A stretch of 64,000 bases of DNA from Isurus oxyrinchus (taxonomy: Eukaryota), in assembly GCA_026770705.1 (NCBI GenBank), contig JANJGN010000071.1, positions 1,922,001-1,986,000 on the forward strand, read 5' to 3'. A program made the position numbers and the translations under genes. Numbering within the stretch: the stretch's first letter is position 1; each line of letters starts with the position of its first letter. Positions 37,151 to 57,300 of the stretch are shown here, in pieces. The notes beneath the pieces were generated by a model, which ran no database searches, had not been told where the DNA came from, and saw nothing but the letters and a program-made list of their open reading frames with translations.

Positions 37151-37267
37151 AAGAAAGATGAGAAGGATCTGGAAATGAAATCTAACCGCGGAGTCAATCC
37201 TGATACAGATGATGATCTTTACGCAAACTGTGAATTTGCCAAGGATTCTGTTTATGGGAATTTATAA
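37151..37267 (+). CDS. Orphan terminal cytoplasmic exon (KKDEKDLEMKSNRGVNPDTDDDLYANCEFAKDSVYGNL-stop)
   Basis: Strong acceptor TTTCTATTACAG, phase 0, acidic-flanked YAN and YGNL motifs, TAA. Confidence 0.65.
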   Translation, partial: KKDEKDLEMKSNRGVNPDTDDDLYANCEFAKDSVYGNL

Positions 37268-39310: not shown

Positions 39311-39386
39311 ACATTCTTGGCACACAAAGGGTTAACAGTTTTCTAACTGTGCGAGGCAAAGAGATGCTTTCTAACTTGGGACTAAC

Positions 39387-39527
39387 CACTTCCTCATTTT
39401 GTCTCACAGTGACACATCCACCCTTTCTATTTAAACACACAGAGGGAGCAGCACAGGAAGAGGTCATTCAGCCCAAGCAGAGCGTGTGGGCAGTTCCTCC
39501 CCAGGCGAGCAGTCGGCCAGGTCCTGG
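39387..39527 (+). promoter_or_regulatory. Gene B promoter and non-coding exon 1
   Basis: CACTTCCTCATTTT (reverse strand AAAATGAGGAAGTG, PU.1/Spi-like), TATTTAAA at 39428-39435, donor at 39527/39528. Confidence 0.62.
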
Positions 39528-39977
39528 GTAAGTAACGGAACGATTGGAATTCACTTCCACGACCAACACCATCCTTTGTTGATGTTGTGACTTTATAAAG
39601 ACAGATTCCAATGATTGATGCCTTTGAAAGATTTCTACTGATCATTGAGATCAGGGTGTGAGGCTCAGTTCTGTTGTACAGAATATCTTTCTAGCTCAAA
39701 GGATGAGGGAATATCAGGGGTATGAGCTTTGGGACATCCTGAGGTGGTGAAAGGTGCTATAGAAATGCAAGTCCTTCATTGATTTATTTTTTTAAAGCTT
39801 TTTCACTCTCTGCAGAGCACCTATCATCCCACAGAGAACCAAATTAGTCTGTGAAGACATTGTCTAAAAGCAGTTCTGATCTCTCGAGAGCTGTCGGACA
39901 AGAGGTGAGGTCTCATTAACTCCTTTCTCTTTCAGAGTTTAAGAGTCAGAAGCTAAAGGAATATCTGGGAGTGGACA

Positions 39978-40017
39978 ATGATCGGGAAATCTTACTTCCT
40001 CCTGTCACTTCTCCAAG
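39978..40017 (+). CDS. Gene B leader exon
   Basis: MIGKSYFLLSLLQ, acceptor at 39935, donor G|GTAATA. Confidence 0.85.
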
Positions 40018-43000
40018 GTAATATCATCGTCAGCTTGGACAGACTTATGGCTAATAGTCTTTGTAAAAGAACATTCTTACTGAGCTCTGATAGGGAACTG
40101 ATTCAGCAGTGAGCCAGTGTACAAACTCACACCAAGTCCCATTCACCCATCACCCCTGTGCTCACTGATATACACTGACTCCCTGTCTGACAGCAGAACT
40201 GCAGGACAGCAGAGACCTCAAAGGGTTTCAGGGCTGGAGGGGGTGACAGTGATAGGGATTAGAGAGGGAGGATGGAGGGATAAGGAATCAATGAAGAGAT
40301 TTTGAAAATTGAGTCATTGCTGGACTGGGAGCCAGCGTAGGTCAGCGAGTGACAGGGGAGCAATCGGCTGAATAGAGAAGCAGGGATAAAAACTGGGGGA
40401 TGAAGTCTATCCTGATGCAAGCACTCCGATATCAATGCCCTGAAATTTTTCTCTCTTGCTGATTTTCATCAGAACTTCCCATGAAGACAACACAGAAGCT
40501 CTTAGATTAGACAGGCTGTTCAGCGTCACACTTCCTGTCCCTTCTCACCATGCTAGATACTTCAATAAGGGAGCAAGATAACTGATAGAGAGAAGGGAGG
40601 CAAAGCTGTCTGTGTGTAAAACTGTCAAATATTCCGAGTTATCATGATTGTTTCTGATCTGCTGCAGAGTTTATATTTCATTGAAACTTATCACTTTGCA
40701 GTTCAGAGAGAGACCATTGACTCACTGCCTGAAAGGCCGGAGAAGCAGATTCAACAGGAACTTTCAGAAGGGGAACTGGATAAATACTTGAAGGGGACAT
40801 TTTGCAGGGCTGTGGGGGAGAGAGCAGAGGTGAGAGTGGGACGAATTGGACAGATCTTTCAAAGGCGCAGCACAGGCTCGATGGGCCAAATGGCTTCCTT
40901 CAGTTCTGGATCATTCTACAATCCGATAAATTAAATCTCTTATCAGTAACTCTTCAGGCTCCTGCTGCAGGAATGGATCTTTCAGAAGGGCAGGGAACAA
41001 ACGGTTTCTCATATCATGTTCATATTTATTGACAATTACATAAGTGTATGGAACTGTTGAATATTTGACTCTCTAAAGTGTGGATTTAACCTTCTGGTCC
41101 ACCCAGATCTTGTGCTGGTTACCTTGTCTGGAGGTGTCTTTAACTGCTCACAGTGATCTGTGGGATTGTCACCCTTGGATGTTGTTCCTGATTTCATGTG
41201 GGATCTTCTCCTCGATGAAATAGGAGCGGGAATGGATCTGATTTATCCTCGGTTCCACCTCACCGCTGTGCCCTTGTGTGTTTGACTCCATAGGCCCTTG
41301 GTTCTGAACAAATCCTTGTCACCTCGGCTGGTGGTCATGAACCTTCTGTGGGATCCTGGATGTGAACTTGTCCCAACTGTAAACTTGGCAACTCTGCACC
41401 TCCATTTTTATCATGAACATTCCTTATCTTCTCTTGTAGTTTTAAAAGTTGCCCTCTGGTTTCTGAGAGAGTAGAATGGGTAAGAGTAGCGAAATTGGTC
41501 ACTACTGGCCCACCAAACATGTTCTCTGTCAGTGATGGAATAAGGTGAGGTGATGGTGTAGTGGTATTGTTGCTAGATGAGTAATTCAGACACCCAGGGT
41601 AATGTCCTGAGAATATGGGTTCAAATCCGACCATAATAGATGATGAAATTTGAATTTAATAAAAAGATGAAATTCAAAGTCTAGTGATGACCACAAAACC
41701 ATTGTTGGAAATCCCACCTGGTTCACCAGTGCCATTTAGGGAACAAAATTGTCTGGCGGACATGTGACTCCAGACTCCACGTCAATGTGGTTGACTCTTA
41801 CATTAGGGATGGGTAATAAATCCTGGCCTGACCAGTGACTCCCACATCCCATGAATGAATTTAACAAAGTTGCAGTTGTAGGTGTCGATCTCAGATGTAA
41901 CATTGCAATGTGTGGATCTTGCTTGGTCTGTCTACATTTGAGAATTAGGGATTTCACTGTGTGAATCATTCATTCAGCTAGGCTGTTAGATCTGGGGTAA
42001 TGAGGAGAAGAAGTAGTGTGATTGATATTCCAGATTATCTGTAATCATGAACCTAGGTTCACCAAATAAACTGAAAATAGTGCTCAGAGTGTGTGCACCA
42101 GTTGTGCTCGGTGTGTTGTGCTATTTTTGAATAACGGGATATCTGGTAAAGCTGTCGACGATGACGATGAAGTCAGTGACATGGACATGAAAGGATTCAG
42201 ATGTGATTTTGGACTAAGAATAGGCAGGAATTTCCTGTGGAATCAATGTTTCTTTGTGTTGACTTGGCTCATCCTCTTGACAAGCCTCGTACTTCCCTAC
42301 AACAACTTCAAGGTCATTGTTCATACCCGGCCAGGGACTGTATCTCTTGTGAGTCTCCTTGTGTGATCTGTGCCCATGTGTGAGGGATGAAGTGGTTGAA
42401 GAATATAGGATCACAAATGTGCCGGTATGATGCCCTGCCTGCCATTAAAAATGACTCCCTGGGAGATGCCTCGCTTATCTCGATGAGGTCAAGTTGAATC
42501 AGGCCACCCTTTCAATGATATTTCCACAGTTCCTGCAGAATTTTTCACTGTTCCCTCTTGTAGCTGCTGGCATTTCTGTTGTGCTAAATGTACTGGATCA
42601 ATTGACAGACTTGCATTCTCCTGCAGGTGTAATGTAGCAGCTCCCTTGAAACTGACAATACTGTTGAAACTTTCTGCATATTTCAATGTTATGTCCATGA
42701 ACTGAGTTGATGGGGTAGTTTCTGCATTTGACCCATGTGAAGTCTGACAGATTCCATGCATTGTCACTAGTGTGAGGTCACTGCATGCCGGTAGACTTGC
42801 AATTGCTCAGCCTTTAGTCTCCACGATGTAGAACATCTGTGACACCCAGGAGGATTGATTGTATTTGCACCCCAGGACTATGGATTCTGCACATGGAGTT
42901 GAAGTGTTGTACATAGCAGTTGGTTTCCCCATGGCCTCCCATGTCCTTGGATACATGTCTTTGAAAATTTGCTGGGGTGGGCTGTGGGAGGGGAATGTTG

Positions 43001-46000
43001 GCACTTGCCCCTGTGTCAATCTTGGTCAATAAAGGGGAGGTTGCAACTTTCTCAGGGCAGAAAATTGGAATCTTGGCCAATAGTGCAGGTGATGTGACAG
43101 CATCTGTTCTCCGTGAGATTGATGGTGTAAAAGGTTTGAAATTGTTCAACAATTGTACAATACGTTGAGCACAACTGTTGCACAAACTCTAGGTTGGGGT
43201 TTTCCGGCACAGTCATGATGGGACCTGCCGTGGGAGATTGGACAAACATTGGCTTTCGGCTGGACCGGACAATCCTGGCAGTGGGTGGGGCCAGAAAATC
43301 CCACCCCTATGGGACATTTTCAGTTTATTTGATGTGCCCAGAGAGATCTTTAAAGACAACAATCCACAATTTATTGGCAAGCCACGCCAGGATATGTGTG
43401 AGAGGTGGAATATCGATCAGCGCTCCTCGTCTCACCGTGTACATCATCGCCATTTCCTGGTTTGTCAGTCACCACATGTATATGTTCCTGATGGAATAGC
43501 GGATGGTCATTCTTATTGCTTGAAGGTTCCCCGTTGTGTAGGGTCTGTTTGGATCAGTGCACGGCTCTTTGTAGCTGCATGAGCCTTTGCTCTAGTGCCC
43601 TGCCGCTGTCAATGGCCCTTTCTGCCACAAGCCTTGCAGGATTGGTGGAAAGCTGGGCATTTCCTTGGTGCCTGCAGAAGGCCACACCTTCCACATGTCT
43701 CACTAGGTTTGGATGTTCTAGTCAGTGTGTCAACAATTGATGTTGTACTGAGGACCTGTAAGCTTCGTTGACCTGCGAGGATCACTTCGTATTTATGTCG
43801 ATCCTTGAGTAGCTCTTCAATGCTATAGGTTTTGGTCTTATCTAGCAGATCTCACCACGAGGGATCCGTTTGCTCCCCAGCTCTTTACTTGAGCTCTTTC
43901 CCGTCACTGTGTCTTCAAAGGTTTCCTGAGCAGTCAGTACACTGCGATTTCAACCCTCTCTGATGCTGTGTCTCTGTTATGGTCTGACCAAAGCGTTGAG
44001 GGTCGTCTCATGTCATGTAGCTCGATCTCAGGCTGTTCACCACGTCATACCTGTACTGAATCTTGCTGCCAGAATGTTTGGCCACCGCTGATCACCATGT
44101 TGTGTTTTTATAATGATATAAAGGCACCAGCCACTGATACGGAATTAGGTAAATACATTGTGGATTCATTTATTTAGAATAGTGACATGAGAACAGATAC
44201 ACAAGGATAGAAACTGGGAGACACCTGCAGCCAAACTGTGTGAGCTGTGTTCTGCTCACAGGCCAAAGTGAAACTTGGACTGGATGGTGTTATCATCCCA
44301 GCTGATGTTACTACTGGGCAAGTCAGATCCCAGGGTGGAACTCAGCTTGATAGGTCCTAACTTTTATTTTTTATTTAGGAATGTGGAGAGCAGCTACTGA
44401 ACAGAGTCACAGGAGTCATCTGATGAACTTCTAACAAAAGAATAAAACATTTATTAAACTAGGAAAGACAAACTATATTACATTACTCCATCACCCAGAC
44501 CTATACATTTACAGATATATACAGATTCATAAAGATAACGCAAGTTACAATAGCTATCTTATACTCTCATGTTCAAACTAAGTACACAGTCCATGTAAAC
44601 CAATAGACGACCTGTGGTCAGGGGCACCACATTCTAAAATCAAGTGACAGAACCCACTTGAAACAAATGCTATGTCTCCCTCCTCATCTGACCCCAGACG
44701 CTTGTTACACTGTGAGCCAACCAGTCTCACTGAACTGAGATATCCATATGAGGGTTTCCAATCTCCACTCTCCAAGAACTCACTTTGGAATCTTCTCCAA
44801 CATGACACTTTCACTCAGACACCTTCCACAAGGGTCCACTTTCACTATTTCAAACTCTCCTTCCCATGTTCCTGCCCCCTGGATCGCCACGTGCATTCAG
44901 CCTTCCTTCCACGCCCTGTCTCTCCAATGCTCAGCCGTGTCAATGGAACACCATGGCTTCACATGGCCGTAGTAATGAGTCACCAACCTGTGGTGTCTCC
45001 TAGGATCTTCTGGCTTCTCACAAGCCTATTTTGCTTTAGGCCTGTGTCCTGCTGCTTTCTCCCTTTATGCTTGAAGCCTTCTTCTGCTCCTCACTCTTAA
45101 CTTCACTTAACAGGGCCTTTTCCAGATTTGACTAGAAGGTCTTCTTGGGCCCTTTCTCCTGTTCCACTCGATGGTTTTGGCTTCATCTTTACTTTGGGAC
45201 TGACTATCTGTCCCAATCCTTTGTTGCTTCTCCTGGCAACTCCTTTCAACAGAACTGAAAGTCCTTTTCTGTTTTTCTCTGTCTCTGTGGTTCCCTCCCT
45301 CTGGATCACTGTTGCTAGGCAACAGCACAGTTTCTTACACGTTGTATTTGTTTTGACAGTCATAAAACCTCAAAGGAACGCTGGCTTCTTTTAAAGTCAA
45401 ATTCTATCTTTTCAAAACACCTAAACACAAAAATGCAAACTAAACTTGAACTTAAAGATAGACCTTATGCCTAACACACAAATAGACACATAGAACTGAC
45501 TTAAGCCAACCGCCGTTCCTATAGATCACATGACACACTTCCCCTCGAGTGATGTCATGCTGCTGTCCCTGAAAGGCATATTACAACAGTGTTATCACTT
45601 GACAGGTGATGTGTGCCAGGCAGACAAAGTCGATGAGAGAAAGGTGGTCACACTATCATAATGATTTTGCAATTTGTATTTATTATGAGATGTGTGCACT
45701 GAATTCAGAAGCAATAAGTCCACCAAGAAATTTAGAGAATTAAAAAAATAAATTAAAATATTTGTCATCAAAATAAAAGATTTCAAGCACATACATAAGA
45801 CTACAATGACAGCTATAATAACTCCTAAAATTCCTAATTAACCTGACTCCCAGTTACACTCCCGTTAAGGCAACAGTCCAAAAATAGATGTTAGATTTAA
45901 AACAAACTCAGCAAGTTAACCCAATGCCCTGGACAGTGGAATTCCAAATGGATTTTCCCCAACTTCAGTTCTGTTGGATAGCAGGCTTGTGCACAAACAG

Positions 46001-49000
46001 GGTCCTGAGGACCATCAGCCAATGTAGAATGATCTTGTCAACTCCTGTGTCCAGGATTCTCTTCTAACCATTGTGATACCTTGTGGAGTTCCTTGTGTGT
46101 CCTGTAGATGGTCCACACTGCAGCCGCTGTGCCCCAGTGATGGAGGGGGTGGATATCGAGTCTAGTGGATCTACAAATTATCAAGATTTAAATATTGATA
46201 TTTCTCTCCCCAGTTGGACTGTCACAAGAATGGGAAAGTAACACTCCACGAGAGGTGACAGCACAGAAAGGTTCATGTGTACAGATTCCATGTCATTACA
46301 ATTACCCATCACATTTGTTAGAGAAAACACATGTCGGAATCTGGAATATGAGGAGGGACAAATGGAATACATCGTCTATAGCCTTTCACTCCAAGGATCA
46401 CAGTCACGAGTTATCACGGTTCCACCATCGGACCCGGCTGTCTGGAGACCTGAAAGATGGCGACTGTTCCCTGATTATAAACAACATCAGATGGGGAGAT
46501 GCAGGATTTTTTTTTTTCAGAATAGAATTTGACAATGGTCGGAGCCATAACTATTACCCTGAAACCCAGCTTCATGTTTCTGGTAAGTGCTGTGTTATAA
46601 TTACTCAACAATTCACATCCAACACTCAATGGGAAATAATAGTGTTTGATTTGCTTGTTTTTTGGCCGTGTTAACCAGCGTCACTATTTTTAATGATTTG
46701 TCTATTTCTGCTCCCAGATCCATGAGCTTATTGTGTGTGATTGAATCCACATCATAGCTGTAACATAAACTGAGCTGAGGGGTGATGACACCGCCCCCCT
46801 GAGTGAAGTGTCTCCTCCCCACTACACCTTCCACCCCTCACACCGTCAGGTCTGACCTGGTGACAGTGCGGAGCTAATCACCAAATCACACCTTGGCCTG
46901 ACCCCCACCCCCACCTCCTCTGGCACTTTCTCCTCCTTTGAATATCTCACCGTGTTCCACCCCTCTCATCTCTCCTTCTAAATTCTCGTTCTCTATCGCT
47001 GATCACTCCAGGAATGATAAACATCTTCGCCCCAGGATATCTTCACTGCTTTCCTCCCTCAGTCTCTGCACCGACTGAATTCCCATCCTCGGAGATCTCA
47101 ATCTCCATCTCATCTCATCCCGCTCGGTTATTCCAACTCACTCCTGGCTGGTCTCGCACATTCTACCCTCTGTAAACTTGGGGTCATCTAAAACTCAGCT
47201 GCCCCTGTCTTAACCAGCAGTAACTCCCGTTCCCCTATCCCCACTGTACTCTCTGACCTTGAATGGCTCCTGGTCAAGCAATGTCTTGATTTCAAAATGC
47301 TTGTCCTTGCTTCCTCCCTATCTCTGTAATCTCCTCCTGTGCTACAGCCTTCCCAGATTTCTGCACTCCTCTACCTCTGGACTCTTCAGCATCCCTGATT
47401 TCCATCGCTCCAGCATGGACGGCCAAGCCTTCAGTAGCCTGGGTCCTGAGACTTAAATCCTTTCATCTTTCTATCTCCTCCTTTAAGGTGCTCCTTTAAA
47501 CCCACCTCTTCAACCAAAGTTCCGATTATCTGACCTAATATCTCCTTATATGGCGTGGGACCATACTTTGTATTATAATGCTCCTGTGGAGCACCTTGGC
47601 ATGTTATATTACAATATAGGCACTATATAAATATAATCCATTGTTCTATGCTCCTCTAGACCATTTAGATTCTTAATTTCGAGTTAACATGCAACCTGGT
47701 AACCTGGTGATAGCTTCCAGTTCAGTCCGAAAGCAACCTCTAATACTCACTTTAATATCAATGATTAAATATATTGACTGTGTCCATCAATGTTATCAGG
47801 TTATCCACTCCCATCGATCTCTCTAATCATGTCTCGAAGTCTGACATATCGTTAGAATAAAGATTCACATTTATGTAGCACCTTTCACAACCTCAGCACG
47901 GACCAAATCACTTCACAGCCAATGCGCTGATTCCTGAATTGTAGTTACTGTTGTAATGTGGGAAACACAACAACCAATTTGCGCACAGCAAACTCCCACA
48001 AATTGACAAGTAACAAATGACCTAGATCGCTGAGGGACTGATGGGGTAGTGCACTCCAAACTCTGGTCTGCTCCTCCACCCTCACCCACTATTATCAGTT
48101 CAAGTGTCTCGGAGTGAACGTATATTAAGCTGAGAGACAGAAACACCAAAGTCTCAAAGCAGGAAATGCTCTCCTGATCATTGTAACATCTCAGATCTGC
48201 TATCATCCTTGTAAAAGTGCTTTCTCTTGTGGGACTGTGGTTTCTATTTGAACTGATGCTTCATGTTATATTTCTCTAAAAGGATCCATTCTCTGTGTGT
48301 CAGATTTCACAGATAAACCCACGATATTCCCTGCTGAAATTATTGCAGGAAAGCGTGTGGATGTAAGCTGCACCTTCAACACAACATGCAATGGAACAGC
48401 AGCACCTGTCTTAACCTGGGACACTCCCACTGACGTACCTGGATCAGTCTCAAACACTGTAACTCAGCATGGTGTCACTCTGACCTATACTTCTGTTCTG
48501 ACCCTGATCCCATCACTCAAACACCACGGACACAATCTCAGCTGCAGAGTGAGATATCCATCTGTTTCATCGGAGCGGACCCTCGTACTAACTGTGCAAG
48601 GTCAGTACGGACAGCCTTCATTCTACATCAGAATTCCCTCAGCGCTGACCCTCTGACAGTGCAGCCCGTTCTCAGTGTCCATATTCTCAGGCCACTCAAA
48701 GTGCTTCACAGTCGATAGAAGTTAACTGATCTTTATTTGATTGTTGCTGAATGAAGTGACAAGCTGTCTAAACTTTACAGCTTGCACACGTTATTTTCCA
48801 TGGCAACACCTCCTCTAATCAGAGACCACTTGCCAACCAATCAGCACTCTCTTCCCTTTAAATATAAATTGTTGTTCATTTTCTGTTGGTAAACCTGCGA
48901 GCTGTCATGTTGAGTCCTGCCCTGACATCTCAATGTCACAATGAACAGAACAAGTTCCAACAATGAGCTGCGGTTGGTGATTCCTCACGTTACATCCAGG

Positions 49001-50337
49001 GACACTGGAGACTATCAGTGTGTGGCAGAGAATGAACATGGAGCAGTGGAGGTGTCCATAACCATCACTGTGGAACGTGAGTGTGCACAGACTTCAACAT
49101 CACTCTCAGGTTCAAACACTACACAAATACACACAAATATACAGACCTAAGCAGACACCTGCAGACACACAATCCCACATGTATGAGCACACACAAAGAT
49201 ACACTCACAAACAAACACCCTATCACATACTGCCCTGTGGGTTACCTGACCTCCCTCAGTGCTGCACCGGAGTATTGACCTAGATTCTGGGTTTTGTGTT
49301 CCCTTTCATATTTATGGAAGAATATGGAAATTGCAAGGTCTATTACAGACACTCAGATGCACAGGGATACTCACAGATACTCTCTGCCTCTCCAACTCTC
49401 TATCCTCCTTTAAGAAGTTTCCTGAAACCTAATCCTTTGACCAGTCACCTGTCCCAACTCGTCCTTATGTGATTTTGTGTGAAATTTTGTTTGAGTATCT
49501 GAGAGTAAGAGAGAGGTGGAGAGGTTTAGGAAGGGAATTCCTGTTGGTGAAAAGCTTACATCATGTTCTCAGCTTTCCAGTGCCCATATTTCACATGATG
49601 TCCAATGTCCTTGTTCATAATGGGGATTGCCTATGTAAACGTCACGCTGTAGTTACACTCTCCCACCAGTGGTGGCACGGTAGCACTTAACCCTTGCATC
49701 TCCAAGTTTTTCAAGCAATTTCCCTTCCTAATTTCCTACTATTCACCTCGACCGCTCCCTGTGGGAGTGAGTTCCACATTCTCCCCTCTCTCTGGGTAAA
49801 GATTGGAACTGTTCATTAAGCGGGGGGTGTAAGTCCGTGGGGGAGTCCATCTCGATCCTGCCCGATTCGCACACGCGTCCGAGATGGATTTCCACACTCC
49901 ACTAAACGTTTCCAGAATTTTCTACAGCACAATCCTGTACACAGCGATGGAGAGAAACATTGGACAGGGAGTCCAACAGCACAATGATCCATTCTCACCA
50001 ATGTTCCACGCTAAGGGGAAAGTTGCGATTGTCCACTCTTAGAGTGTTTACAATGAAAACATTCATTCCACATTGAATCCCAGTGGATGGGTCAATATTA
50101 CAGCAAATGTTGCAGTGATATGAAGCTTGATTGTTCAGCCAGAGTGAGAGATTGAAAGCGGAGAGTCAGTGATGATTTCTTTCTGTGTGTTCTCTAGACA
50201 GTGGAGGAGAGATTCTGCACGTGATCCTGATCCTGGGAATACGAGCTGTGATATTCCTTGTGGCTGTGGTTATCACTATCGCTGGAGTCTGTGTCTGGGA
50301 GAGACAAACAGTGAAAGGAAGTCGACAGACTGTTTAA
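39978..50337 (+). CDS. Gene B: short Siglec-like activating-type receptor, leader-V-C2-TM(Arg)-short tail, about 281 aa
   Basis: Exons 39978-40017, 46214-46582, 48304-48600 and 50198-50337 sum to 846 nt, in frame, canonical sites. Confidence 0.78.
41010..45588 (-). mobile_element. Decayed Ty3/Gypsy LTR retrotransposon; LTR 44098-45588 split by a nested element at 44288-45523
   Basis: Protease KIDTGASANI, integrase-like WPGMNNDLE...EAC, PBS-like TGGTGATCAGCGGTGG (reverse complement of 44082-44097), TGT...ACA LTR ends. Confidence 0.78.
46214..46582 (+). CDS. Gene B V-set exon
   Basis: 369 nt. SCVQIPC, GDCSL, GDAGFFFFRIE with Arg kept. Confidence 0.9.
48304..48600 (+). CDS. Gene B C2-set exon
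   Basis: 297 nt, GTCAG| to CAAG|GTCAGT, intact. Confidence 0.88.
48924..49076 (+). pseudogene. Gene B broken Ig repeat exon (acceptor and 5' part replaced by unrelated sequence at about 48740-48920)
   Basis: Intron homology stops at CTTTATTTG (48739) and resumes mid-exon. First Cys missing, W to R change. Confidence 0.85.
50198..50337 (+). CDS. Gene B TM and tail exon (DSGGEILHVILILGIRAVIFLVAVVITIAGVCVWERQTVKGSRQTV-stop)
   Basis: Acceptor TTTCTGTGTGTTCTCTAG, phase 1, long hydrophobic stretch with Arg (CGA 50242-50244), stop at 50335-50337. This frame is not in the ORF track. Confidence 0.8.
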
Positions 50338-50444
50338 AGCTTTGTACAGCAACAATCTGGTCAGTCAGTGCGGACAAATAACGTGTGATGTTGGGTTAAG
50401 TTGTAATGAAACTGGTCAGTGTCCTGGTTAGAATCACCTTCGTA

Positions 50445-51050
50445 TCAGAGAGGCATTCCAGCACAGAGGGAGCCCATTCAGCCCATTGAGTCCATGCTGT
50501 CTCTCTGCAGAGCAATCCAGTCAGTCCCATTCCCCGCTCTATCCCCGTATCCCTGTGAGTTTATTTCCAATTGTCCATCCAATTTCCTTTTGAAATCGTT
50601 CATCGTCTCCACTTCCACCATCCTCGTAGGCAGCGATTTCCAGCTCATTACCACTCGCTCTGTAAAAAAGTTCCTCCTCACATCCCCCCTCTGCCCACAA
50701 CCTTCAATCTGTGTCCCTCAGTCCTTGTCCCATCAGCTAATGGCAACAGCTTCTCTTTGTCTGCCTTATCTAAACCCATCATCATCTTGTACACCTCGAT
50801 CAGATCCCCCCTCAATCTCCTTTGCTCCAAGGAGAACAACCCCAGCTTCTCCAACCCAACCTTGTAGCTAAAATCCCTCATCCCTGGACCCATTCTGCTC
50901 AATCTCCTCCCCACCGTCTCAAGGACCTCACTTCCTTCCCAAAGTGAGGAGGCCAGAACTGGACACAATACTCTAGTTGTGTCCTAACCAGAGCTTTGTA
51001 AATGTTCAGCATAACCTCCCTGTGTTTGTACTCAATCCCTCCATTTATGA
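50445..51050 (-). mobile_element. CR1 LINE 3' end inside the presumed gene B 3' UTR
   Basis: LGLFSLEQRRLRGDLIEVYKMM and YKALVRTQLEYCVQFWPPH on the minus strand. Confidence 0.78.
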
Positions 51051-51408
51051 AAAGCTTATTCTTTCCATCAGCACAAACAGCAATTTCCAAGCGGACTCCC
51101 ATCAGCAGACAGAGTGCAATGAAACATCGGCATGCCTGCTTCTTAATGTACGGAGAGAAACCTGGAACGAGAGATTCTCCTTCTTCTCCTCAGCAAGCTG
51201 AAACTTTTCCTTATACCTGGTGCTCCCCAGTCCTGCTGTGTGGACACATCATAACCACGGCATTGTCTGGCTGTGTGCAGCCAACATGGTCGAATAGGAA
51301 TGAACAGAAATGTGACATTGCTAAACTCTGTTCTCTGATTGGAATGTGCTTTCTGAATGCTGCACCTTTTTCATGCTGCGATAGATTGTAAGAAGCATTT
51401 GGGTTATG

Positions 51409-51414
51409 AATAAA
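51409..51414 (+). terminator. Putative polyadenylation signal of gene B
   Basis: AATAAA at the end of a block (51270-51430) homologous to the gene A 3' UTR (24455-24625). Confidence 0.5.
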
Positions 51415-51769
51415 ATTACATTGATTAACACAAGTGATTAAAATGTTCAGCCTTTTCTGTAGATACTTATGGATTAAAATTCTTATTTTGCTGCCAGATT
51501 CTTGGCTCAAGGACATTATTTCATGTTGTCACTTTTTCCAGTCAGATGAATTCCTGTGGCCATCTTTATAATGGAAATTTTCAATGTAAACACGTCACAT
51601 TGCAGCTGCACACTCCTGCCAGTGGTGGTGCCATTCCAAAACTGTCTTGCTGCACCAACACAGTGAGAATTATTCTCGACATGTACATGATGTTGTTGTT
51701 ACACAGACATCAGGCGGAATCTTGGGCTGTGCCTAGAATGCACTTAGGACATTGCAGACCACGCACAGA

Positions 51770-53487
51770 ACTGACAGTGCAGCGTTTCCTCAGTGCTGAC
51801 CCTCGGTCAGTGCAGCGCTCCCTCATTACTGTCCCTCTGACAGTGCTGCACTACCTCATTATTGACCCTTTTCAAGTGCAGCACCCTGTCAGCACTGACC
51901 TTCTGACAGTGCAGCACACCCTCATGGCTGACAATCTGACAGTGCAGCACTCCCTCAGTACTCATCCACCCACAGTGCAGCACTCCCTCAGTACTGATCC
52001 TCTGACACTGTATCCCTCCCTCACTACTGACCTTCCGACAGTTCAGCACTCCCACGGTACACACCTTCTGACAGTGCAGCACTCCCTCAGTACAGACTCT
52101 CTGACAGTGCAGCACTCCCTCAGTACTCACCCTCCCACAGCGCAGCCCTCTCTCAGTACTCACCCTCCCACAGTGCAGCACTCCCTCAGTACTCACCCTC
52201 CCACGGTGCTGTTCGAGTTGATTCAATCAAGACTGGTGCCCAAAGAGGGAGGTTTCAATGCTAAATCATTGAATCGGTGAAAATTATTTTTAGGCTTACG
52301 GGAACAAGACTTAGTTCCTCAAATCCTTTCTTTTGCAATAACACACAGTACAAGAATTCTGTTTAAATAAATTCCAGTTAAACTTTGCCATGAAAGGATA
52401 TCTTCTCACACTCGGCTCTACCTCAGTACTAACCCTCCCACAGTCCGGCACCCCCTCAATACTTACCCTCCGACCGTGCGGAACTCACTCAATACAGACC
52501 CGCCGACAGTGCAGCACTCCCTCAGTACTGACCCTCTGACCGTGCAGCACTCCCACATTACTGACCCTCTGACAGTGCAGCACTCCCACATTATTGACCC
52601 TCTGACAGTGCAGCGCTCCCACATTACTGACCCTCTGACAGTGCAGCACTCCCTCAGTACTCAGCTTCCCACAGTGCAGCACTCCCTCAGTACTCACCCT
52701 CCCACAGTGCAGCACTCTCTCAGTACTCACCCTCCCACAGTGCAGCACTCCCTCAGTACTCACCCTCCCACAGTGCAGCCCTCCCTCAGTACTCACCCTC
52801 CCACAGTGCAGCACTCCCTCAGTACTCACCCTCCCACAGTGCTGTTCGAGTTGATTCAATCAAGACTGGTGCCCAAAGAGGGAGGTTTCAATGCAAAATC
52901 ATTGAAATCGATGAAAATTATTTTTAGGCTTACGGGAACAAGACTTAGTTCCTCAAATCCTTTCTTTTGCAATAACACACAGTACAAGAATTGTGTTTAA
53001 ATAAATTCCAGTTAAACTTTGCCATGAAAGGATATCTTCTCACACTCCGCTCTACCTCAGTACTAACCCTCCCACAGTCTGGCACCCCCTCAATACTGAC
53101 CCTCCGACTGTGCGGAACTCACTCAGTACAGACAATCTGACAGTGCAGCACTCCCTCATTACTGACCCTGTGACAGTGCAGCACTCCCTCAGTACTGACC
53201 CTCCGACAGTGCAGCACTCCCTCAGTACTGACCATCTGACAGTGCAGCACTCCCTCAGTACTGAACCTCTGACCGTGCAGCACTCCCTCATTACTGACCC
53301 TCTGACAGTGCAGCAATCCCACATTACTGACCCTCTGGCAGTGCAGCACTCCCTCATTACTGACCCTCTGACAGTGCAGCACGCTCCCATTACTGACCCT
53401 CTGATAGTGCAGCACTCCCACATTACTGACCCTCCCACAGTGCAGCACTCCCACAGTAGAGTCCCGCTGACAGTGCAGCACTCCCTC
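51770..53487 (+). repeat. Three 33-bp minisatellite arrays separated by a duplicated spacer of about 220 bp
   Basis: Spacer GTGCTGTTCGAGTTGATTCAATC at about 52206 and 52839. Confidence 0.88.
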
Positions 53488-53712
53488 CGTAATGATAACA
53501 GGGGTCGTTGAAATGTATCATACGGCCCGAGACCTGTGTTGGGGACTCTATCGCCTGAGTTTCAGCCTCTGTGGTGAGGGGGAGGAGTCTAATCCCACGG
53601 AGCCAATGGAGAAGCTTCATGACTACAGCTGCCCAAATATGAGCTGACAGATCACACATGGTAAACGTTTTGCTGAGAGCACAAAACATCCTCGATCTTT
53701 TCACTGATTACC

Positions 53713-53853
53713 CACTTCCTCATTTTGTCTCACAGTGACACATCCACCCTTTCTAATTAAACACACAGAGGGAGCAGCACAGGAAGAGGTCATTCAGCTC
53801 AAGCAGAGCGTGTGGGCAGTTCCTCCCCAGGCGAGCAGTCGGACAGGTCCTGG
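53713..53853 (+). promoter_or_regulatory. Gene C promoter and non-coding exon 1
   Basis: Same PU.1-like site and exon-1 block; donor at 53853/53854. Confidence 0.62.
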
Positions 53854-54303
53854 GTAAGTAACGGAACGATTGGAATTCACTTCCACCACCAACACCGTCC
53901 TTTGTTGTTGTTGTGACTTTATAAAGACAGATTCCAATGATTGATGCCTTTGAAAGATTTCTACTGCTTATTGAGATCTGGGTGTGAGACTCAAGTCTGT
54001 TGTACAGAACATCTTTCTAGCTCAAGGGATGAGGGAAGTGCAGAGACATGAGCTTTGGGACGTCTTGAGGTGGTGAAAGGTGCTATAGAAATGCAAATCC
54101 TTTAATGTTTTTCTTTCTTAAAGCCTTGTAACTCTCTGCAGAGCACCTATCATCCCACAGAGAATCAAATTAGTCTGTCAAGACATTGTCCAAAAACAGT
54201 TCTGATCTCTTGAGAGCTGTCGGACAAGAGGTGAGGTCTCATTAACTCCTTTCTCTTTCAGAGTTTGAGAGTCAGAAGCTTATGAAATATCTGGGAGTGG
54301 ACA

Positions 54304-54343
54304 ATGATCGGGAAATCCTACTTCCTCCTGTCACTTCTCCAAG
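54304..54343 (+). CDS. Gene C leader exon
   Basis: MIGKSYFLLSLLQ, acceptor at 54261, donor G|GTAATA. Confidence 0.85.
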
Positions 54344-57300
54344 GTAATAACGTCGTCAGCTCGGACAGTTTTATGGCTAATAGTCTTTGTAAAAGATCAT
54401 TCTTATTGAGTGTGATTGGGAACTGATTCAGCAGTGAGCCAGTGTACAAACTGACACCAAGTCCCATTCATCCATCACCCCTGTGCTCACTGATATACAC
54501 TGACTCCCTGTCTGACAGCAGAATTGGAGGAGAGCAGAGATCTCAGAGGGTTTTAGGGTTGGAGGAGGTTACAGGGATCGGGAGTGTAGAGGGGGGATGG
54601 TGGGTTAAGAACTCGATGATGAGAATTTGAAATTTGAGTCATTGCTGGACTGGGAACCAGTGTAGTTCAGCCAGTGACAGGGGAGCGATCCGCTGAATAG
54701 AGAATCAGGAATACCAACTGGGGGATGAGGTCTATCCTGATGCTGGGACTCGGATAACAATGCCCTGAAATTTTGTGTCTTTTGCTGATTTTGTCAGAAT
54801 TTCCCATGAAGACAACACAGCAGCTCCTAGAATAGACAGGCTGTTCAGTGTCACACTTCCTGTCCATTCTCACCTTGCTAGATACTTCAATAAGGGAGCA
54901 AGATAACTGAAAGAGAGAAGGAAGGTAAAGCTGTCCGTGTGTAAAACTGTCAAATATTCTGAGTTATCATGATTGTCTCTGATCTGCTGCAGAGTTTAAA
55001 GTTCTCAGAACATTAGCACTTTGCAGCTCAGAGAGAGACCATTGACTCACTGCCTGAAAGGGCGGTGGAAGCAGATTCAACAGGAACTTTCAGAAGGGGA
55101 ACTAGATAAATACTTGAAGGGGACATTTTGCAGGGCTGTGGAGGAGAGAGCAGAGGTTAGAATGGGACTAATTGGACAGATCTTTCAAAGGCCCAGCACA
55201 GGCTCGATGGGCCAAATGGCATCCTTCATTTCCGGATCATTCTACAATCTGATAAATTAAGCCCCACATCAGTAACTCTTCAGGCTCCTGCTGCAGGGAT
55301 GGATCTTTGAGAAGGACAGGGAACAAGAGGTTCCTGGTATCATTTTCATATTTCTTGACAATTATATAAGTGTATAGATCTGTTGAATATTTGAGTCTCT
55401 AAAGCGTAGAGGTAATCTGCTGTTATATCAAGATCTTGTGGTGGCAAAATTGTCTGGAGGTTTCTTTAATTGCTCACATTGATCTGTGGGATTGTCATTC
55501 TTTGATGTTGTCCCTGGTTTCAATTGACATTACACCCTTGATGCAACTGAGGAGGCTTTAAACTAATATGGCAGGGGATCGGATCCCGAGAGGAGGTTCA
55601 ACAGAGAGAGATGCACAGCCAAAATTAGAAGAGAGAGCAAATGAAACTGGAAGGCATAGAAATTATTGGCCATTTAAGGCTCAAGATAGCGTGGCAAAGT
55701 TGGATTGTATTAATTTTAATGCAAGGAGTCTGACAGACTTGCATTCCCCTGCAGGTGTAATGTTGCAGCTCCCTTGAACCTGCCAATATTGTTGAATCTT
55801 TCTGCATATTTCAATGTTATGTCATGAACTGAGCTGATGGGATAGTTTCTGAGACTGGGACAGACATAAATCCATTGGCTTTCGGCCGGACCGGACAATC
55901 ATGGAAGTGGGTGGGGCCAGAAAATCCCACCCCTATGGGAACATTTTCAGTTAATTTGATGTGCCCAGAGAGATCAATAAAGACCACAATCCACAATTTA
56001 TTGGCAAGCCACGTCAGGATATGTGTGAGAGGTGGAATATCGATCACCGCTCCTAGTCTCGTCGTGTACATCATCGCCATTTCCTGGATTGTCAGTCACC
56101 ACATGTATATGTTCCTGATGGGATAGCGGATGGTCATTCTTATTGCTTGAAGGTTCCCCGTTGTGCAGGGTTTGATTGGATCAGCGCACGGCTCTTTGCA
56201 GCTGCATCAGCCTTTGCTCTAGTGCCCTGCCGCTGTCAATGGCCCTTTCTGCGACAAGCCTTGCAGGATTGGTGGAAAGCTGGGCATTTCCTTGGTGCCT
56301 GCAGAAGGCCACACCTTCCACACGTCTCACTAGGTTTGGATGTTCTAGTGAGTGTGTCAACAATTGATGTTGTACTGAGGACCTGTAAGCTTCGTTGACC
56401 TGCGAGGATCACTTCGTATTTATGTCCATCCTTGAGTAGCTCTTCAATGCTATAGGTTTTGGTCTTATCTAGCAGATCTTTCTGGAAGGCTTCCATGGGA
56501 GTGGATGTAATCACCAACTCAACAACTCTGTCTGCAGGCTCTGTGTTTGAAATCACAGTGCGTACCCTTTTCTCTACATCGGCTGATGAAGTGGTCTATG
56601 GGTTGTGTAGGCTGATGAAATGACATAAACTCTAGTTGATGAATATGGAGTTTCACCTGATTCTGAACCTGTCTTCCAATATCGTCCGTATCTATTGGGG
56701 ATCCTTTCGCTCTTCTGCTGTTAATCCTGATGTGTTCAGCCTGTGTAGACCTTCATTCCCAATCGCGAGGTGAATTTTTATGGCTTGCTCGTCTGGTTCA
56801 GTCACACCTGAATCAGGAAACCAGAGCTCTGTACGCTGTTTAAACATTCTGAATTCAGATAGTCGGTCAGCTACATCCCAGTTCAAACTGGGGAATTTCG
56901 TGGACATTCTGACAATATTCCTTTGACCTTCCTTCTCCTACAGGATCTGGGATGAGTGTCGCTTTAGCCCCTTTCGTGTGCTTTTCCGAAGCTCCGCCCA
57001 CGAAGACGGGTTGTGGCAGGAACACACCACGGAGTAATGGAGTCTTTGTTTTTTATTCAATTTGCTGTTCAGCAATCTCGAAGCTGCCCGTTATAATCAC
57101 TAACTTCTCTGGGCTGATTTTTATAATGGTTTTTGTGTGTTTGACTCTCCCTCGCTCACTATCGATCCAGCCCACACCCGGGTCACTCGCCTTCCCTGAC
57201 TGAGCTAACCCGCTGCTGGTCCTGGCGATACACACTGTCCCACTCACTGACCTACAGGCCGTGTGCTGTAATCTCACCACGAGGGATCCGTCTGCTCCCC

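What the first reader, a model, noticed from the sequence alone, without database searches (positions are those of the whole stretch)
50198..50337. Hidden activating TM exon with an intramembrane arginine
Read in phase 1 from the acceptor at 50197, the exon encodes ILHVILILGI-R-AVIFLVAVVITIAGVCVW and a 12-residue tail with no Tyr. It shows no clear similarity to the gene A TM exon and this frame is absent from the ORF track. A basic TM residue with a short tail is the hallmark of receptors that use ITAM adaptors (DAP12, FcR-gamma, CD3-zeta). Which adaptor is used is unknown. The V-C2-charged TM layout resembles Siglec-15, which uses Lys.
Basis: partly seen in the sequence, partly recalled or inferred. 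Interest (0 to 1): 0.85.

Follow-up and report, generated by a model that had tools for sequence, protein, structure and literature searches.

The report
Shark activating-type Siglec membrane exon
This is the real last coding exon of a shark Siglec-like immune receptor; it provides a membrane anchor with a buried arginine and almost no tail, the usual mark of a receptor that signals through a separate adaptor chain, and the same exon type is reused by several shark receptor families.

Summary
From 50200 the exon reads a 29-residue hydrophobic span with one Arg (codon 50242-50244), a 12-residue Tyr-free tail and a stop at 50335-50337.

The predicted splice 48600|50198 (GT..AG) is present in RNA-like contigs of all four runs laid, from two organisms and three studies. 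The frame is fixed by the phase-1 donor.

The gene ("B") is:
- signal exon 39978-40017
- V-set exon 46214-46582, which keeps the Siglec arginine
- C2 exon 48304-48600
- this TM exon 50198-50359
- a spliced 3'UTR, 51072 to about 51430

Its V and C2 domains are 95% and 98% identical in protein to those of neighbouring long-form gene C. That is a paired-receptor layout like Siglec-5/14.

The exon is not an orphan. The same cassette, with the invariant core ILGIRAxIF, ends RefSeq models of Siglec-like, CD22-like, SLAM-like and single-V receptors in three shark orders.

It is not a Siglec-15 orthologue and lacks the NxxR motif. Adaptor coupling is inferred, and the adaptor is unknown.

Caveat: the contigs cannot exclude a near-identical paralogous locus as the source of the transcripts.

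The scan found this cassette before on another piece of the same genome (s1-300793) and reached the same reading. I rate it a new member of a known kind, of moderate interest.

The parts
39978..40017 (+). Exon 1 of gene B: start codon, 13-residue signal-peptide start plus one base, GT donor at 40018.
   Evidence: the 13 residues match the N-terminus of S. canicula P0012 exactly; the same exon lies at 2068 (gene A) and 54304 (gene C). One search shows the sequence. One search shows the same N-terminus in Carcharodon and Cetorhinus models. This exon was outside the stretch given to read laying, so it has no RNA evidence here.
46214..46582 (+). V-set exon (phase 1 in, phase 1 out) with the Siglec-type Arg in the FFRIEF motif.
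   Evidence: Pfam V-set 2.6e-11 and Ig_CD22 5e-7; the best solved relatives are Siglecs, and the Arg aligns with the ligand-binding Arg of sialoadhesin; high contig depth over the exon; 116 of 122 residues identical to gene C.
48304..48600 (+). C2-set exon with three Cys; the phase-1 donor (G|GT) is at 48600|48601.
   Evidence: C2-set_2 3.3e-9; contigs cover 48303-48584 and the joint starts at 48600; 96 of 98 residues identical to gene C.
48924..49077 (+). Relic 3' half of an Ig (C2b/I-set) exon, with no acceptor and no first half. It is skipped in the mRNA.
   Evidence: homology to the 12 full C2b exons of genes A and C starts in mid-exon at 48924; contigs lying here run on into paralog sequence at both ends, so they come from other genes.
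50198..50359 (+). Transmembrane and tail exon. The coding part is 50198-50337, the stop is at 50335-50337, and 22 nt of 3'UTR follow to the donor at 50360.
   Evidence: sequence and frame; joint 48600|50198 in four runs; contigs covering 50196-50359; homologous C-terminal cassettes in sharks.
50242..50244 (+). CGA codon of the intramembrane Arg. It is residue 15 of the exon and the 11th of the 29-residue hydrophobic span.
   Evidence: the Arg is invariant in all 15 cassettes compared.
50360..51071 (+). Intron within the 3'UTR (GT..AG). It contains an antisense LINE reverse-transcriptase fragment.
   Evidence: loose ends at 50359 (X18) and 51067 (X17); the loose letters map uniquely to 51072-51090. 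LINE-like ORFs on the minus strand at 50678-51102.
51072..51430 (+). Last exon, 3'UTR only, with AATAAA at 51409-51414. The end coordinate is approximate.
   Evidence: contigs cover 51067-51404, a loose end with an A-run sits at 51422, and depth falls to zero after 51413; this is the first AATAAA downstream of the stop.

Best explanation
Gene B is a short Siglec-like receptor of about 281 residues: signal peptide, one sialic-acid-type V-set domain, one C2 domain, then this exon. The exon supplies a transmembrane helix with a buried arginine and a 12-residue tail with no signalling motif.

The most likely mechanism is this. The arginine pairs in the membrane with an acidic residue of a dimeric signalling adaptor (an ITAM chain such as FcR-gamma, DAP12 or CD3-zeta, or a DAP10-like chain). 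The adaptor is needed for stable surface expression and carries the signal. Gene B would then be the activating partner of the neighbouring long-form gene C, which has a nearly identical ligand-binding head and a tyrosine-bearing tail.

The exon is a reusable cassette. B appears to be a copy of a C-like gene whose 3' part was replaced, just after the C2 exon, by the end of an activating Siglec gene: half an Ig exon, an intron and the TM(R) exon.

Shown here: the exon, its frame, the splice, the polyadenylated spliced 3'UTR, the domain identities, conservation of the cassette and its Arg, and near-identity to gene C.

Inferred: adaptor pairing, activating signalling, sialic-acid binding and the rearrangement history.
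For: - Sequence and frame.
- Strong TM hydropathy despite the Arg.
- Splice 48600|50198 in four RNA-like runs (two organisms, three studies), with exon depth far above intron depth and a second GT..AG joint in the UTR. The stop lies 22 nt before that last junction, so nonsense-mediated decay is not expected (general rule, my own knowledge).
- Siglec V-set with the key Arg, plus a C2 domain.
- Signal exon.
- B and C are 97.6% (V exon), 97.1% (intron 2) and 98.7% (C2 exon) identical in DNA, against 89-93% upstream. Homology ends 31 nt past the C2 donor.
- B's V domain is closer to gene C (116 of 122 residues) than to any other TM(R) form found (86-94 of 122).
- The cassette is C-terminal in Siglec-like, CD22-like, SLAM-like and single-V receptors of Lamniformes, Carcharhiniformes and Orectolobiformes. 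Its core ILGIRAxIF is invariant, and the tails are 4-13 residues with no Tyr.
- Against the great white shark model P0020, the 29-residue hydrophobic span is identical while the 12-residue tail has four changes.
- Precedents: the basic-TM, DAP12-coupled paired Siglecs 5/14 and 11/16 (PMC6288428), and a charged TM exon shared across IgSF families and shown to bind FcR-gamma in Xenopus (PMC2413239, PMC4536121).
Against: - No adaptor was examined and no binding or signalling data exist.
- The Arg has 18 uncharged residues after it, so it could sit nearer the outer interface than the middle. Its position therefore does not discriminate between adaptors.
- The motif is not NxxR.
- The tail motifs of the presumed inhibitory partner are YxN-type, and gene C's tail lies outside the window, so 'inhibitory' is not established.
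- The C2 side of the joint contigs (27-56 nt) lies where B and C are identical. At the two B/C-distinguishing C2 sites (48386 and 48535) all four runs show the gene-C letters. The contigs therefore cannot prove that the spliced transcript comes from this copy rather than a near-identical paralog.
- The runs are only guessed to be RNA.
- The long-form TM of the family is also well conserved among sharks, so TM conservation alone is weak evidence for a partner.
Confidence: 0.7

Rival explanations
1. The exon is used, but the receptor is a signal-less decoy or ligand sink. It is a membrane-anchored head with no partner, and the Arg only tunes trafficking or ER retention, or snorkels to the outer interface. 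It competes with long-form gene C for ligands without transmitting an activating signal.
For: The tail has no motif. Eighteen hydrophobic residues follow the Arg, nearly enough to span a membrane on their own. In Xenopus, some charged-TM receptors reach the surface without FcR-gamma (PMC2413239). Skates have short-tailed family members with no TM charge at all (P0055, P0058 and P0065).
Against: The Arg and its neighbours (ILGIRAxIF) are invariant across four receptor types and three shark orders. A passive anchor would not be expected to keep them. Ten hydrophobic residues precede the Arg, so it is buried in any placement.
Confidence: 0.12
2. This particular copy is silent or decaying. The spliced contigs would come from a near-identical paralogous V-C2-TM(R) gene elsewhere in the genome, and gene B in this window would be a recent rearranged duplicate of no function.
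For: At 48386, 48535 and 46414, all contigs in all four runs differ from the window. One intron/exon contig of X5 (49742-50250) differs at 13 of 509 letters, while a contig of the same sample (X16, 49900-50206) differs at 1 of 307, which suggests two loci or two haplotypes. The scan noted the same 140-letter cassette on another piece of this genome. The locus carries a truncated relic exon.
Against: All four coding exons are open with intact splice sites. The RNA-like run X5 holds 41% of the exact 31-mers of the 4.5-kb stretch, introns included. A near-identical contig crosses the acceptor region in X16. Contigs drop minority variants, so a missing B letter is not evidence of absence.
Confidence: 0.13
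3. The Arg pairs not with a classical ITAM adaptor but with another partner: a DAP10-like YxxM chain, another receptor with an acidic TM residue, or a shark-specific adaptor. The output need not be ITAM/Syk activation.
For: The motif differs from both described codes, NxxR for FcR-gamma and central Lys for DAP12 (PMC2413239). An older survey found no FcR-gamma in cartilaginous fish (PMC4016189). No ITAM-encoding frame exists in this window.
Against: Another window of this scan reports a transcribed FcR-gamma gene in this genome (s1-863553; I did not check it). Arg-bearing receptors in mammals pair with FcR-gamma, zeta, DAP10 or DAP12 (PMC8102735, PMC6288428), so a classical adaptor is sufficient.
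Confidence: 0.05

Closest known systems
Human Siglec-14 and Siglec-16, the activating halves of the Siglec-5/14 and Siglec-11/16 paired receptors
   Same: A Siglec head that is nearly identical to that of a neighbouring long-tailed gene. An Arg in the TM, a short tail without motifs, tandem location, and higher identity over the head than upstream, which suggests gene conversion (PMC6288428).
   Different: Two Ig domains here rather than three or four. The origin is independent and lies in sharks: the TM cassette has no detectable similarity to mammalian Siglec TMs (one search returned only shark receptors plus one repetitive low-scoring match). The partner's tail carries YxN-type motifs, not a proven ITIM. 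The adaptor is unknown.
Siglec-15 (and mouse Siglec-H)
   Same: V-C2-TM layout with a basic TM residue.
   Different: Siglec-15 uses Lys and has a longer tail (my own knowledge). The V domain here matches sialoadhesin, Siglec-5, MAG and CD33 at E about 1e-10 to 1e-9, against 2e-6 for Siglec-15. It is therefore not an orthologue.
NxxR-type TM1 exon of FcR-gamma-coupled receptors (LILRA, OSCAR, GPVI, NKp46; Xenopus XFL, LRC and SLAM families)
   Same: One charged-TM, short-tail exon type is shared by several otherwise unrelated IgSF receptor families in one lineage. It marks the activating members of paired families (PMC2413239, PMC4536121).
   Different: There is no Asn three residues before the Arg (the sequence is L-G-I-R). 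The Arg lies about 11 residues into the hydrophobic span rather than at positions 3-5. There is no sequence similarity, and the cassette was found only in sharks, with a possible stingray counterpart.
RefSeq gene models of related sharks, e.g. Carcharodon carcharias 'CD33-like' (P0020), Scyliorhinus canicula 'Siglec-14 isoform X2' (P0013) and S. torazame XP_072325011 (P0001)
   Same: The same V-C2-D-SGGE...ILGIRA... architecture and junction. The cassette is 41-43 of 45 residues identical to the great white shark models.
   Different: These are automatic predictions named by best hit. I found no paper that describes them. Their V domains are only 70-77% identical to gene B's, so they are paralogs or belong to another species.

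Membership tests
Siglec family | N-terminal V-set domain with the conserved ligand-binding Arg on strand F (F-R-x-E context) | tested here: met
   the Arg of FFRIEF aligns with the ligand-binding Arg of sialoadhesin (1url, 1od7), and the top 17 solved hits are Siglecs. V-set 2.6e-11 and Ig_CD22 5e-7.
Siglec family | Siglec cysteine pattern: an extra Cys in the V domain (SC..IPC plus DC) and a third Cys in the first C2 domain for the interdomain bond | tested here: met
   Read directly from the translations (V: three Cys; C2: three Cys) and from the alignment. The disulfide assignment itself rests on my own knowledge of Siglec structures.
Siglec family | Binds sialylated glycans | not testable with these tools
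   Needs a glycan array or cell-binding assay with gene B-Fc and an Arg mutant.
Paired activating Siglecs (Siglec-14/16 type) | Basic residue inside the TM and a short cytoplasmic tail without tyrosine motifs | tested here: met
   one Arg in a 29-residue hydrophobic span, and a 12-residue tail with no Tyr.
Paired activating Siglecs (Siglec-14/16 type) | Ligand-binding domains nearly identical to those of a linked gene with a signalling tail | tested here: met
   V 116 of 122 and C2 96 of 98 residues identical to gene C, which starts 4 kb downstream. Identity is higher over V-intron-C2 (97-98.7%) than upstream (89-93%).
Paired activating Siglecs (Siglec-14/16 type) | The partner gene carries an ITIM and is inhibitory | tested here: inconclusive
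   Gene C's tail lies beyond the window. Gene A's last exon (37175-37267) has YxN motifs, one of them in an S-x-Y-x-x-L context. Other notes of the scan read these tails as Grb2-type.
Paired activating Siglecs (Siglec-14/16 type) | Arg-dependent association with DAP12 or another ITAM adaptor | not testable with these tools
Siglec-15 orthologue | V domain closest to Siglec-15, a Lys in the TM, and a longer cytoplasmic tail | tested here: not met
   Siglec-15 (7zoz) scores E = 2e-6, behind sialoadhesin, Siglec-5, MAG, Siglec-8, CD33, Siglec-7 and Siglec-10; the residue is Arg and the tail is 12 residues.
NxxR TM1 cassette (FcR-gamma-coupled) | Asn three residues before the Arg, near the N-terminal end of the TM | tested here: not met
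   all cassettes read I-L-G-I-R-A. Seven to ten mainly hydrophobic residues, with one or two polar ones in some cassettes, precede the Arg.
NxxR TM1 cassette (FcR-gamma-coupled) | The same TM exon type is shared by several IgSF receptor families | tested here: met
   Siglec-like, CD22-like, SLAM-like and single-V receptors all carry it. This concerns how the cassette works, not membership of the family.

The most novel reading that the evidence does not exclude
The ILGIRAxIF exon is a shark-lineage 'universal activating module'. It is moved or homogenised between unrelated receptor families (Siglec, CD22-like, single-V and, more distantly, SLAM-like). It co-evolves with one dedicated adaptor. 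In that reading it is an independent solution equivalent to the tetrapod NxxR/FcR-gamma system, with its own membrane recognition code.

A hint in favour: in carpet sharks the Siglec, CD22-like and single-V cassettes are 26-29 of 31 residues identical to each other, but only 22-26 of 31 identical to Siglec cassettes of other shark orders.
Probability: 0.3. Interest if true: 0.65.

Novelty: new member of a known kind. Interest (0 to 1): 0.45.

Why it matters
Paired activating and inhibitory Siglecs have been described mainly in primates, where they are read as counter-measures against pathogens that exploit inhibitory Siglecs. Here a shark gene has the same logic: a nearly identical head on an Arg-TM, tail-less body, placed next to a long-form gene. 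It shows that this arrangement arises repeatedly, and in one of the oldest jawed-vertebrate lineages.

The cassette gives a simple sequence tag (ILGIRAxIF) for counting the activating members of several shark receptor families. It also makes testable the question of which adaptor cartilaginous fish use.

The practical value is modest. Automatic annotation already predicts such proteins, and the scan had already met this cassette.

Tried and rejected
- Frames 1 and 2 of the exon have stops or no hydrophobic span.
- The word-based protein search with the 45-aa exon alone found nothing. This is expected from its length window (25-80 aa) and is not evidence of absence. The exhaustive HMMER search then found the relatives.
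- A region search with P0001 gave only three hits.
I could therefore not fetch DNA of the cassette from other sharks, compare flanking introns, or measure synonymous and non-synonymous change.
- Use of the half Ig exon (48924-49077) in gene B is rejected. It lacks its 5' half and an acceptor, and contigs there continue into paralog sequence.
- The loose end after 48599 (TATAAGCCGG...) is not in the window, so it comes from a paralog elsewhere.
- Siglec-15 orthology is rejected.
- NxxR membership is rejected.
- No ITAM-encoding frame is present anywhere in the window.
- I found no paper on shark Siglecs or on DAP12/FcR-gamma in sharks, beyond a 2014 survey that reported FcR-gamma as absent.
- The spliced protein was never assembled or searched as one sequence. 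The exons were searched one by one by reference.
- Complex prediction was not used, because no adaptor sequence was in hand.

Full report
**1. What is in the sequence**

The window carries three tandem Siglec-like genes on the + strand:
- Gene A: V exons at 5654 and 7694, a C2 exon at 8427, about twelve further Ig exons up to 21261, and TM and tail exons near 34768 and 37175.
- Gene B: V exon at 46214, C2 exon at 48304.
- Gene C: V exon at 59633, C2 exon at 61714, Ig exons at 63000 and 63770, continuing beyond the window.

The finding lies 1.6 kb downstream of gene B's C2 exon. A pyrimidine tract and an AG at 50196-50197 precede it. In the frame starting at 50200 it reads SGGE, then 29 hydrophobic residues interrupted by one Arg (CGA, 50242-50244), then a 12-residue tail without Tyr and a TAA at 50335-50337. 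The other two frames are closed or not hydrophobic. Mean hydropathy over 19 residues reaches 2.95 with the Arg included. The only slip is that the frame does appear as a 50-aa ORF when the ORF cut-off is lowered.

**2. Is the exon used?**

I searched public runs with 46000-50500 and laid four RNA-like contig sets on 45700-51600. X5 and X16 are one sample of organism A. X17 and X18 are organism B, from two other studies.
- All four contain a joint reported as 48598->50196, cut +2. That is 48600|50198, with GT..AG ends.
- Contig depth is high on the V, C2 and TM exons and low or zero in the introns. This, together with the joint, argues that the runs really are RNA, although their kind is only a guess in the record.
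- The C2 exon ends in phase 1 (G).
- Loose ends at 50359 (X18) and 51067 (X17) show a second intron, 50360-51071 (GT..AG). The loose letters map uniquely to 51072-51090.
- The first AATAAA after the stop is at 51409. Contigs stop near 51422 with an A-run, and depth is zero after 51413.
- The stop lies 22 nt upstream of the last junction, so decay of the message is not expected (general rule).

**3. The rest of gene B**

The signal exon was found by matching the N-terminus of a related shark protein. The same 13 residues plus G|GTAA occur at 39978 (B), 2068 (A) and 54304 (C).

The coding exons are 39978-40017, 46214-46582, 48304-48600 and 50198-50337. They total 846 nt, or 281 codons plus the stop. 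Each exon was searched by reference.
- The V exon is a Siglec V-set domain (Pfam V-set 2.6e-11, Ig_CD22 5e-7).
- Its best solved relatives are sialoadhesin, Siglec-5, MAG, Siglec-8, CD33, Siglec-7 and Siglec-10. Its FFRIEF Arg aligns with the ligand-binding Arg of sialoadhesin.
- The next exon is a C2-set domain (3.3e-9).

**4. The skipped half exon and the origin of the 3' end**

B and C are collinear from 43849 to 48631 at 95.7% identity. Homology stops 31 nt after the C2 donor. Next comes 3.1 kb found only in B:
- an unrelated stretch, 48632-48923;
- the 3' half of an Ig exon plus its downstream intron, 48924 to about 49218;
- unique sequence containing the TM exon;
- an antisense LINE fragment.

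After that lies a 33-bp minisatellite (51771-53495), which in genes A and C sits in the intron after the C2 exon. The next duplication unit, with gene C's signal exon, follows.

The half exon lacks its first ~125 nt and its acceptor. Contigs lying on it continue at both ends into the sequence of the full paralogous exons, so nothing shows its use in B.

In related proteins such an Ig exon is followed directly by the cassette (P0002 and P0003). The simplest history is that the end of a longer activating Siglec gene was joined into a C-like copy. This is inference.

**5. A paired-receptor layout**

- B and C differ at 6 of 122 residues in the V domain and 2 of 98 in the C2 domain.
- DNA identity is 97.6% (V exon), 97.1% (intron 2) and 98.7% (C2 exon), against 89-93% in the upstream unit. 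This gradient is the kind seen when gene conversion keeps the heads of paired receptors alike, as described for Siglec-5/14 and Siglec-11/16 (PMC6288428).
- B's V domain is closer to long-form C than to any other Arg-TM form retrieved (86-94 of 122 residues).
- The long forms use a different, uncharged TM exon (gene A: 34768-34884) and tyrosine-bearing tails. Whether those tails are inhibitory is open.

**6. Where the exon comes from**

The word-based search with the 45 residues was blank, for length reasons. The exhaustive HMMER search of 1.84 billion representatives gave ten hits. One (P0008) was a repetitive low-scoring match. The other nine are all shark receptors. In eight the match is the C-terminus; in P0010 it is internal.

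According to their source names and my scan of their sequences, the carriers are:
- Siglec-like proteins with two to many Ig domains: Scyliorhinus torazame, S. canicula, Chiloscyllium punctatum and Carcharodon carcharias;
- CD22-like proteins: C. punctatum and Hemiscyllium ocellatum;
- a single-V receptor: Rhincodon typus;
- SLAM-like receptors: S. torazame and Mustelus asterias.

The core ILGIRAxIF and a later CV are invariant, and the tails are 4-13 residues with no Tyr.

The closest cassettes are great white shark models, at 41-43 of 45 residues. P0020 has the same V-C2-D-SGGE junction and an identical 29-residue hydrophobic span, but four changes in the 12-residue tail.

Within carpet sharks, the Siglec, CD22-like and single-V cassettes are more alike (26-29 of 31) than Siglec cassettes are between shark orders (22-26 of 31). 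The SLAM-like ones stand apart at 14-21 of 31.

A stingray short-tailed family member has an Arg at the same relative place in a weakly similar TM. The alignment score was 48 against a shuffle mean of 24.7 (sd 4.9), and one of 300 shuffles scored higher. This is suggestive only.

**7. Mechanism**

A basic residue buried in the TM, together with a motif-less short tail, is the established signature of receptors that assemble with acidic-TM adaptors. Invariance of the Arg and its neighbours across receptor families fits a shared partner.

The closest functional precedent for a shared cassette is the NxxR TM1 exon of Xenopus FcR-like, LRC and SLAM receptors, which was shown to bind FcR-gamma (PMC2413239, PMC4536121). 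The shark cassette has no Asn at position -3, and its Arg lies deeper in the span, so it is not a member of that type.

Which adaptor is used cannot be read from the sequence:
- A 2014 survey found no FcR-gamma in cartilaginous fish (PMC4016189).
- Another window of this scan reports a transcribed FcR-gamma gene in this genome (s1-863553). I did not check that.
- No ITAM-encoding frame lies in this window.

**8. Caveats**

- The C2 side of the joint contigs is only 27-56 nt long and lies where B and C are identical.
- At 48386 and 48535, the two B/C differences in the C2 exon that contigs cover, all four runs show gene C's letters. At 46414 all four differ from the window.
- One X5 contig across the acceptor differs at 13 of 509 letters, while an X16 contig of the same sample differs at 1 of 307.
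- Contigs drop minority variants, and a paralogous cassette exists elsewhere in the genome.

The splice is therefore proven for this gene type and is very likely for this locus, but it is not locus-specific proof.

**9. Verdict**

The exon is real, expressed and correctly read. It makes gene B an activating-type member of a shark Siglec pair.
- It is not hidden from automatic annotation of related species.
- It is not a Siglec-15 orthologue.
- It was met before by this scan on another piece of the same genome (s1-300793), with the same reading. I reached that reading independently here.
- I found no paper describing shark Siglecs or this cassette.

Noticed in passing
window 48924-49218: A 5'-truncated relic of an Ig (C2b) exon with its downstream intron sits between gene B's C2 and TM exons. 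It marks the rearrangement that attached the TM(R) end to a gene-C-like copy.
   Followed up: yes
window 51771-53495 (also 62203-62722, 8839-9134, 31199-31985 and 23349-23755 on the minus strand): A 33-bp minisatellite gives long open frames on both strands. In genes A and C it lies in the intron after the C2 exon; in gene B it lies after the 3'UTR.
   Followed up: partly
window 39380-41196, 53706-55522 and 1497-3053: A repeated unit of about 1.8 kb carries the identical signal-peptide exon of all three genes. B and C are 89-93% identical here but 97-98.7% identical over V-intron-C2, a gradient that suggests gene conversion of the ligand-binding part.
   Followed up: partly
window 46414, 48386 and 48535: All RNA-like contigs of four runs (two organisms) carry C, G and C where the window has T, A and A. 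The last two are gene C's letters. The cause could be private variants of the assembled individual, conversion between B and C, or contigs dominated by paralogs.
   Followed up: no
window 48599/48600 (loose end in X16, X17 and X18): Some contigs continue from a C2 exon of this type into an exon starting TATAAGCCGGAG..., which is absent from the window. A further paralog elsewhere is therefore transcribed.
   Followed up: partly
window 50478-51102, minus strand: A LINE reverse-transcriptase fragment lies inside the 3'UTR intron of gene B. The acceptor of the last exon (51071) lies within this repeat-derived stretch.
   Followed up: no
protein P0010 (Chiloscyllium plagiosum 'Siglec-11', 307 aa): This RefSeq model reads from the cassette straight into a C2 exon (…CVYFTDKP…). 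It probably joins two neighbouring genes wrongly.
   Followed up: no
proteins P0093 (Hypanus sabinus) and P0055, P0058, P0061, P0065 (skates): A stingray short-tailed family member has a TM Arg in a weakly similar context (LAVRGVLF). Skate short-tailed members have no TM charge and end in CC-R/K. Rays may therefore use a diverged cassette, or a different solution.
   Followed up: partly
window 37175-37267: Gene A's last coding exon has two YxN motifs, one of them in an S-x-Y-x-x-L (ITIM-like) context. The 'inhibitory' nature of the long forms is therefore unsettled.
   Followed up: no
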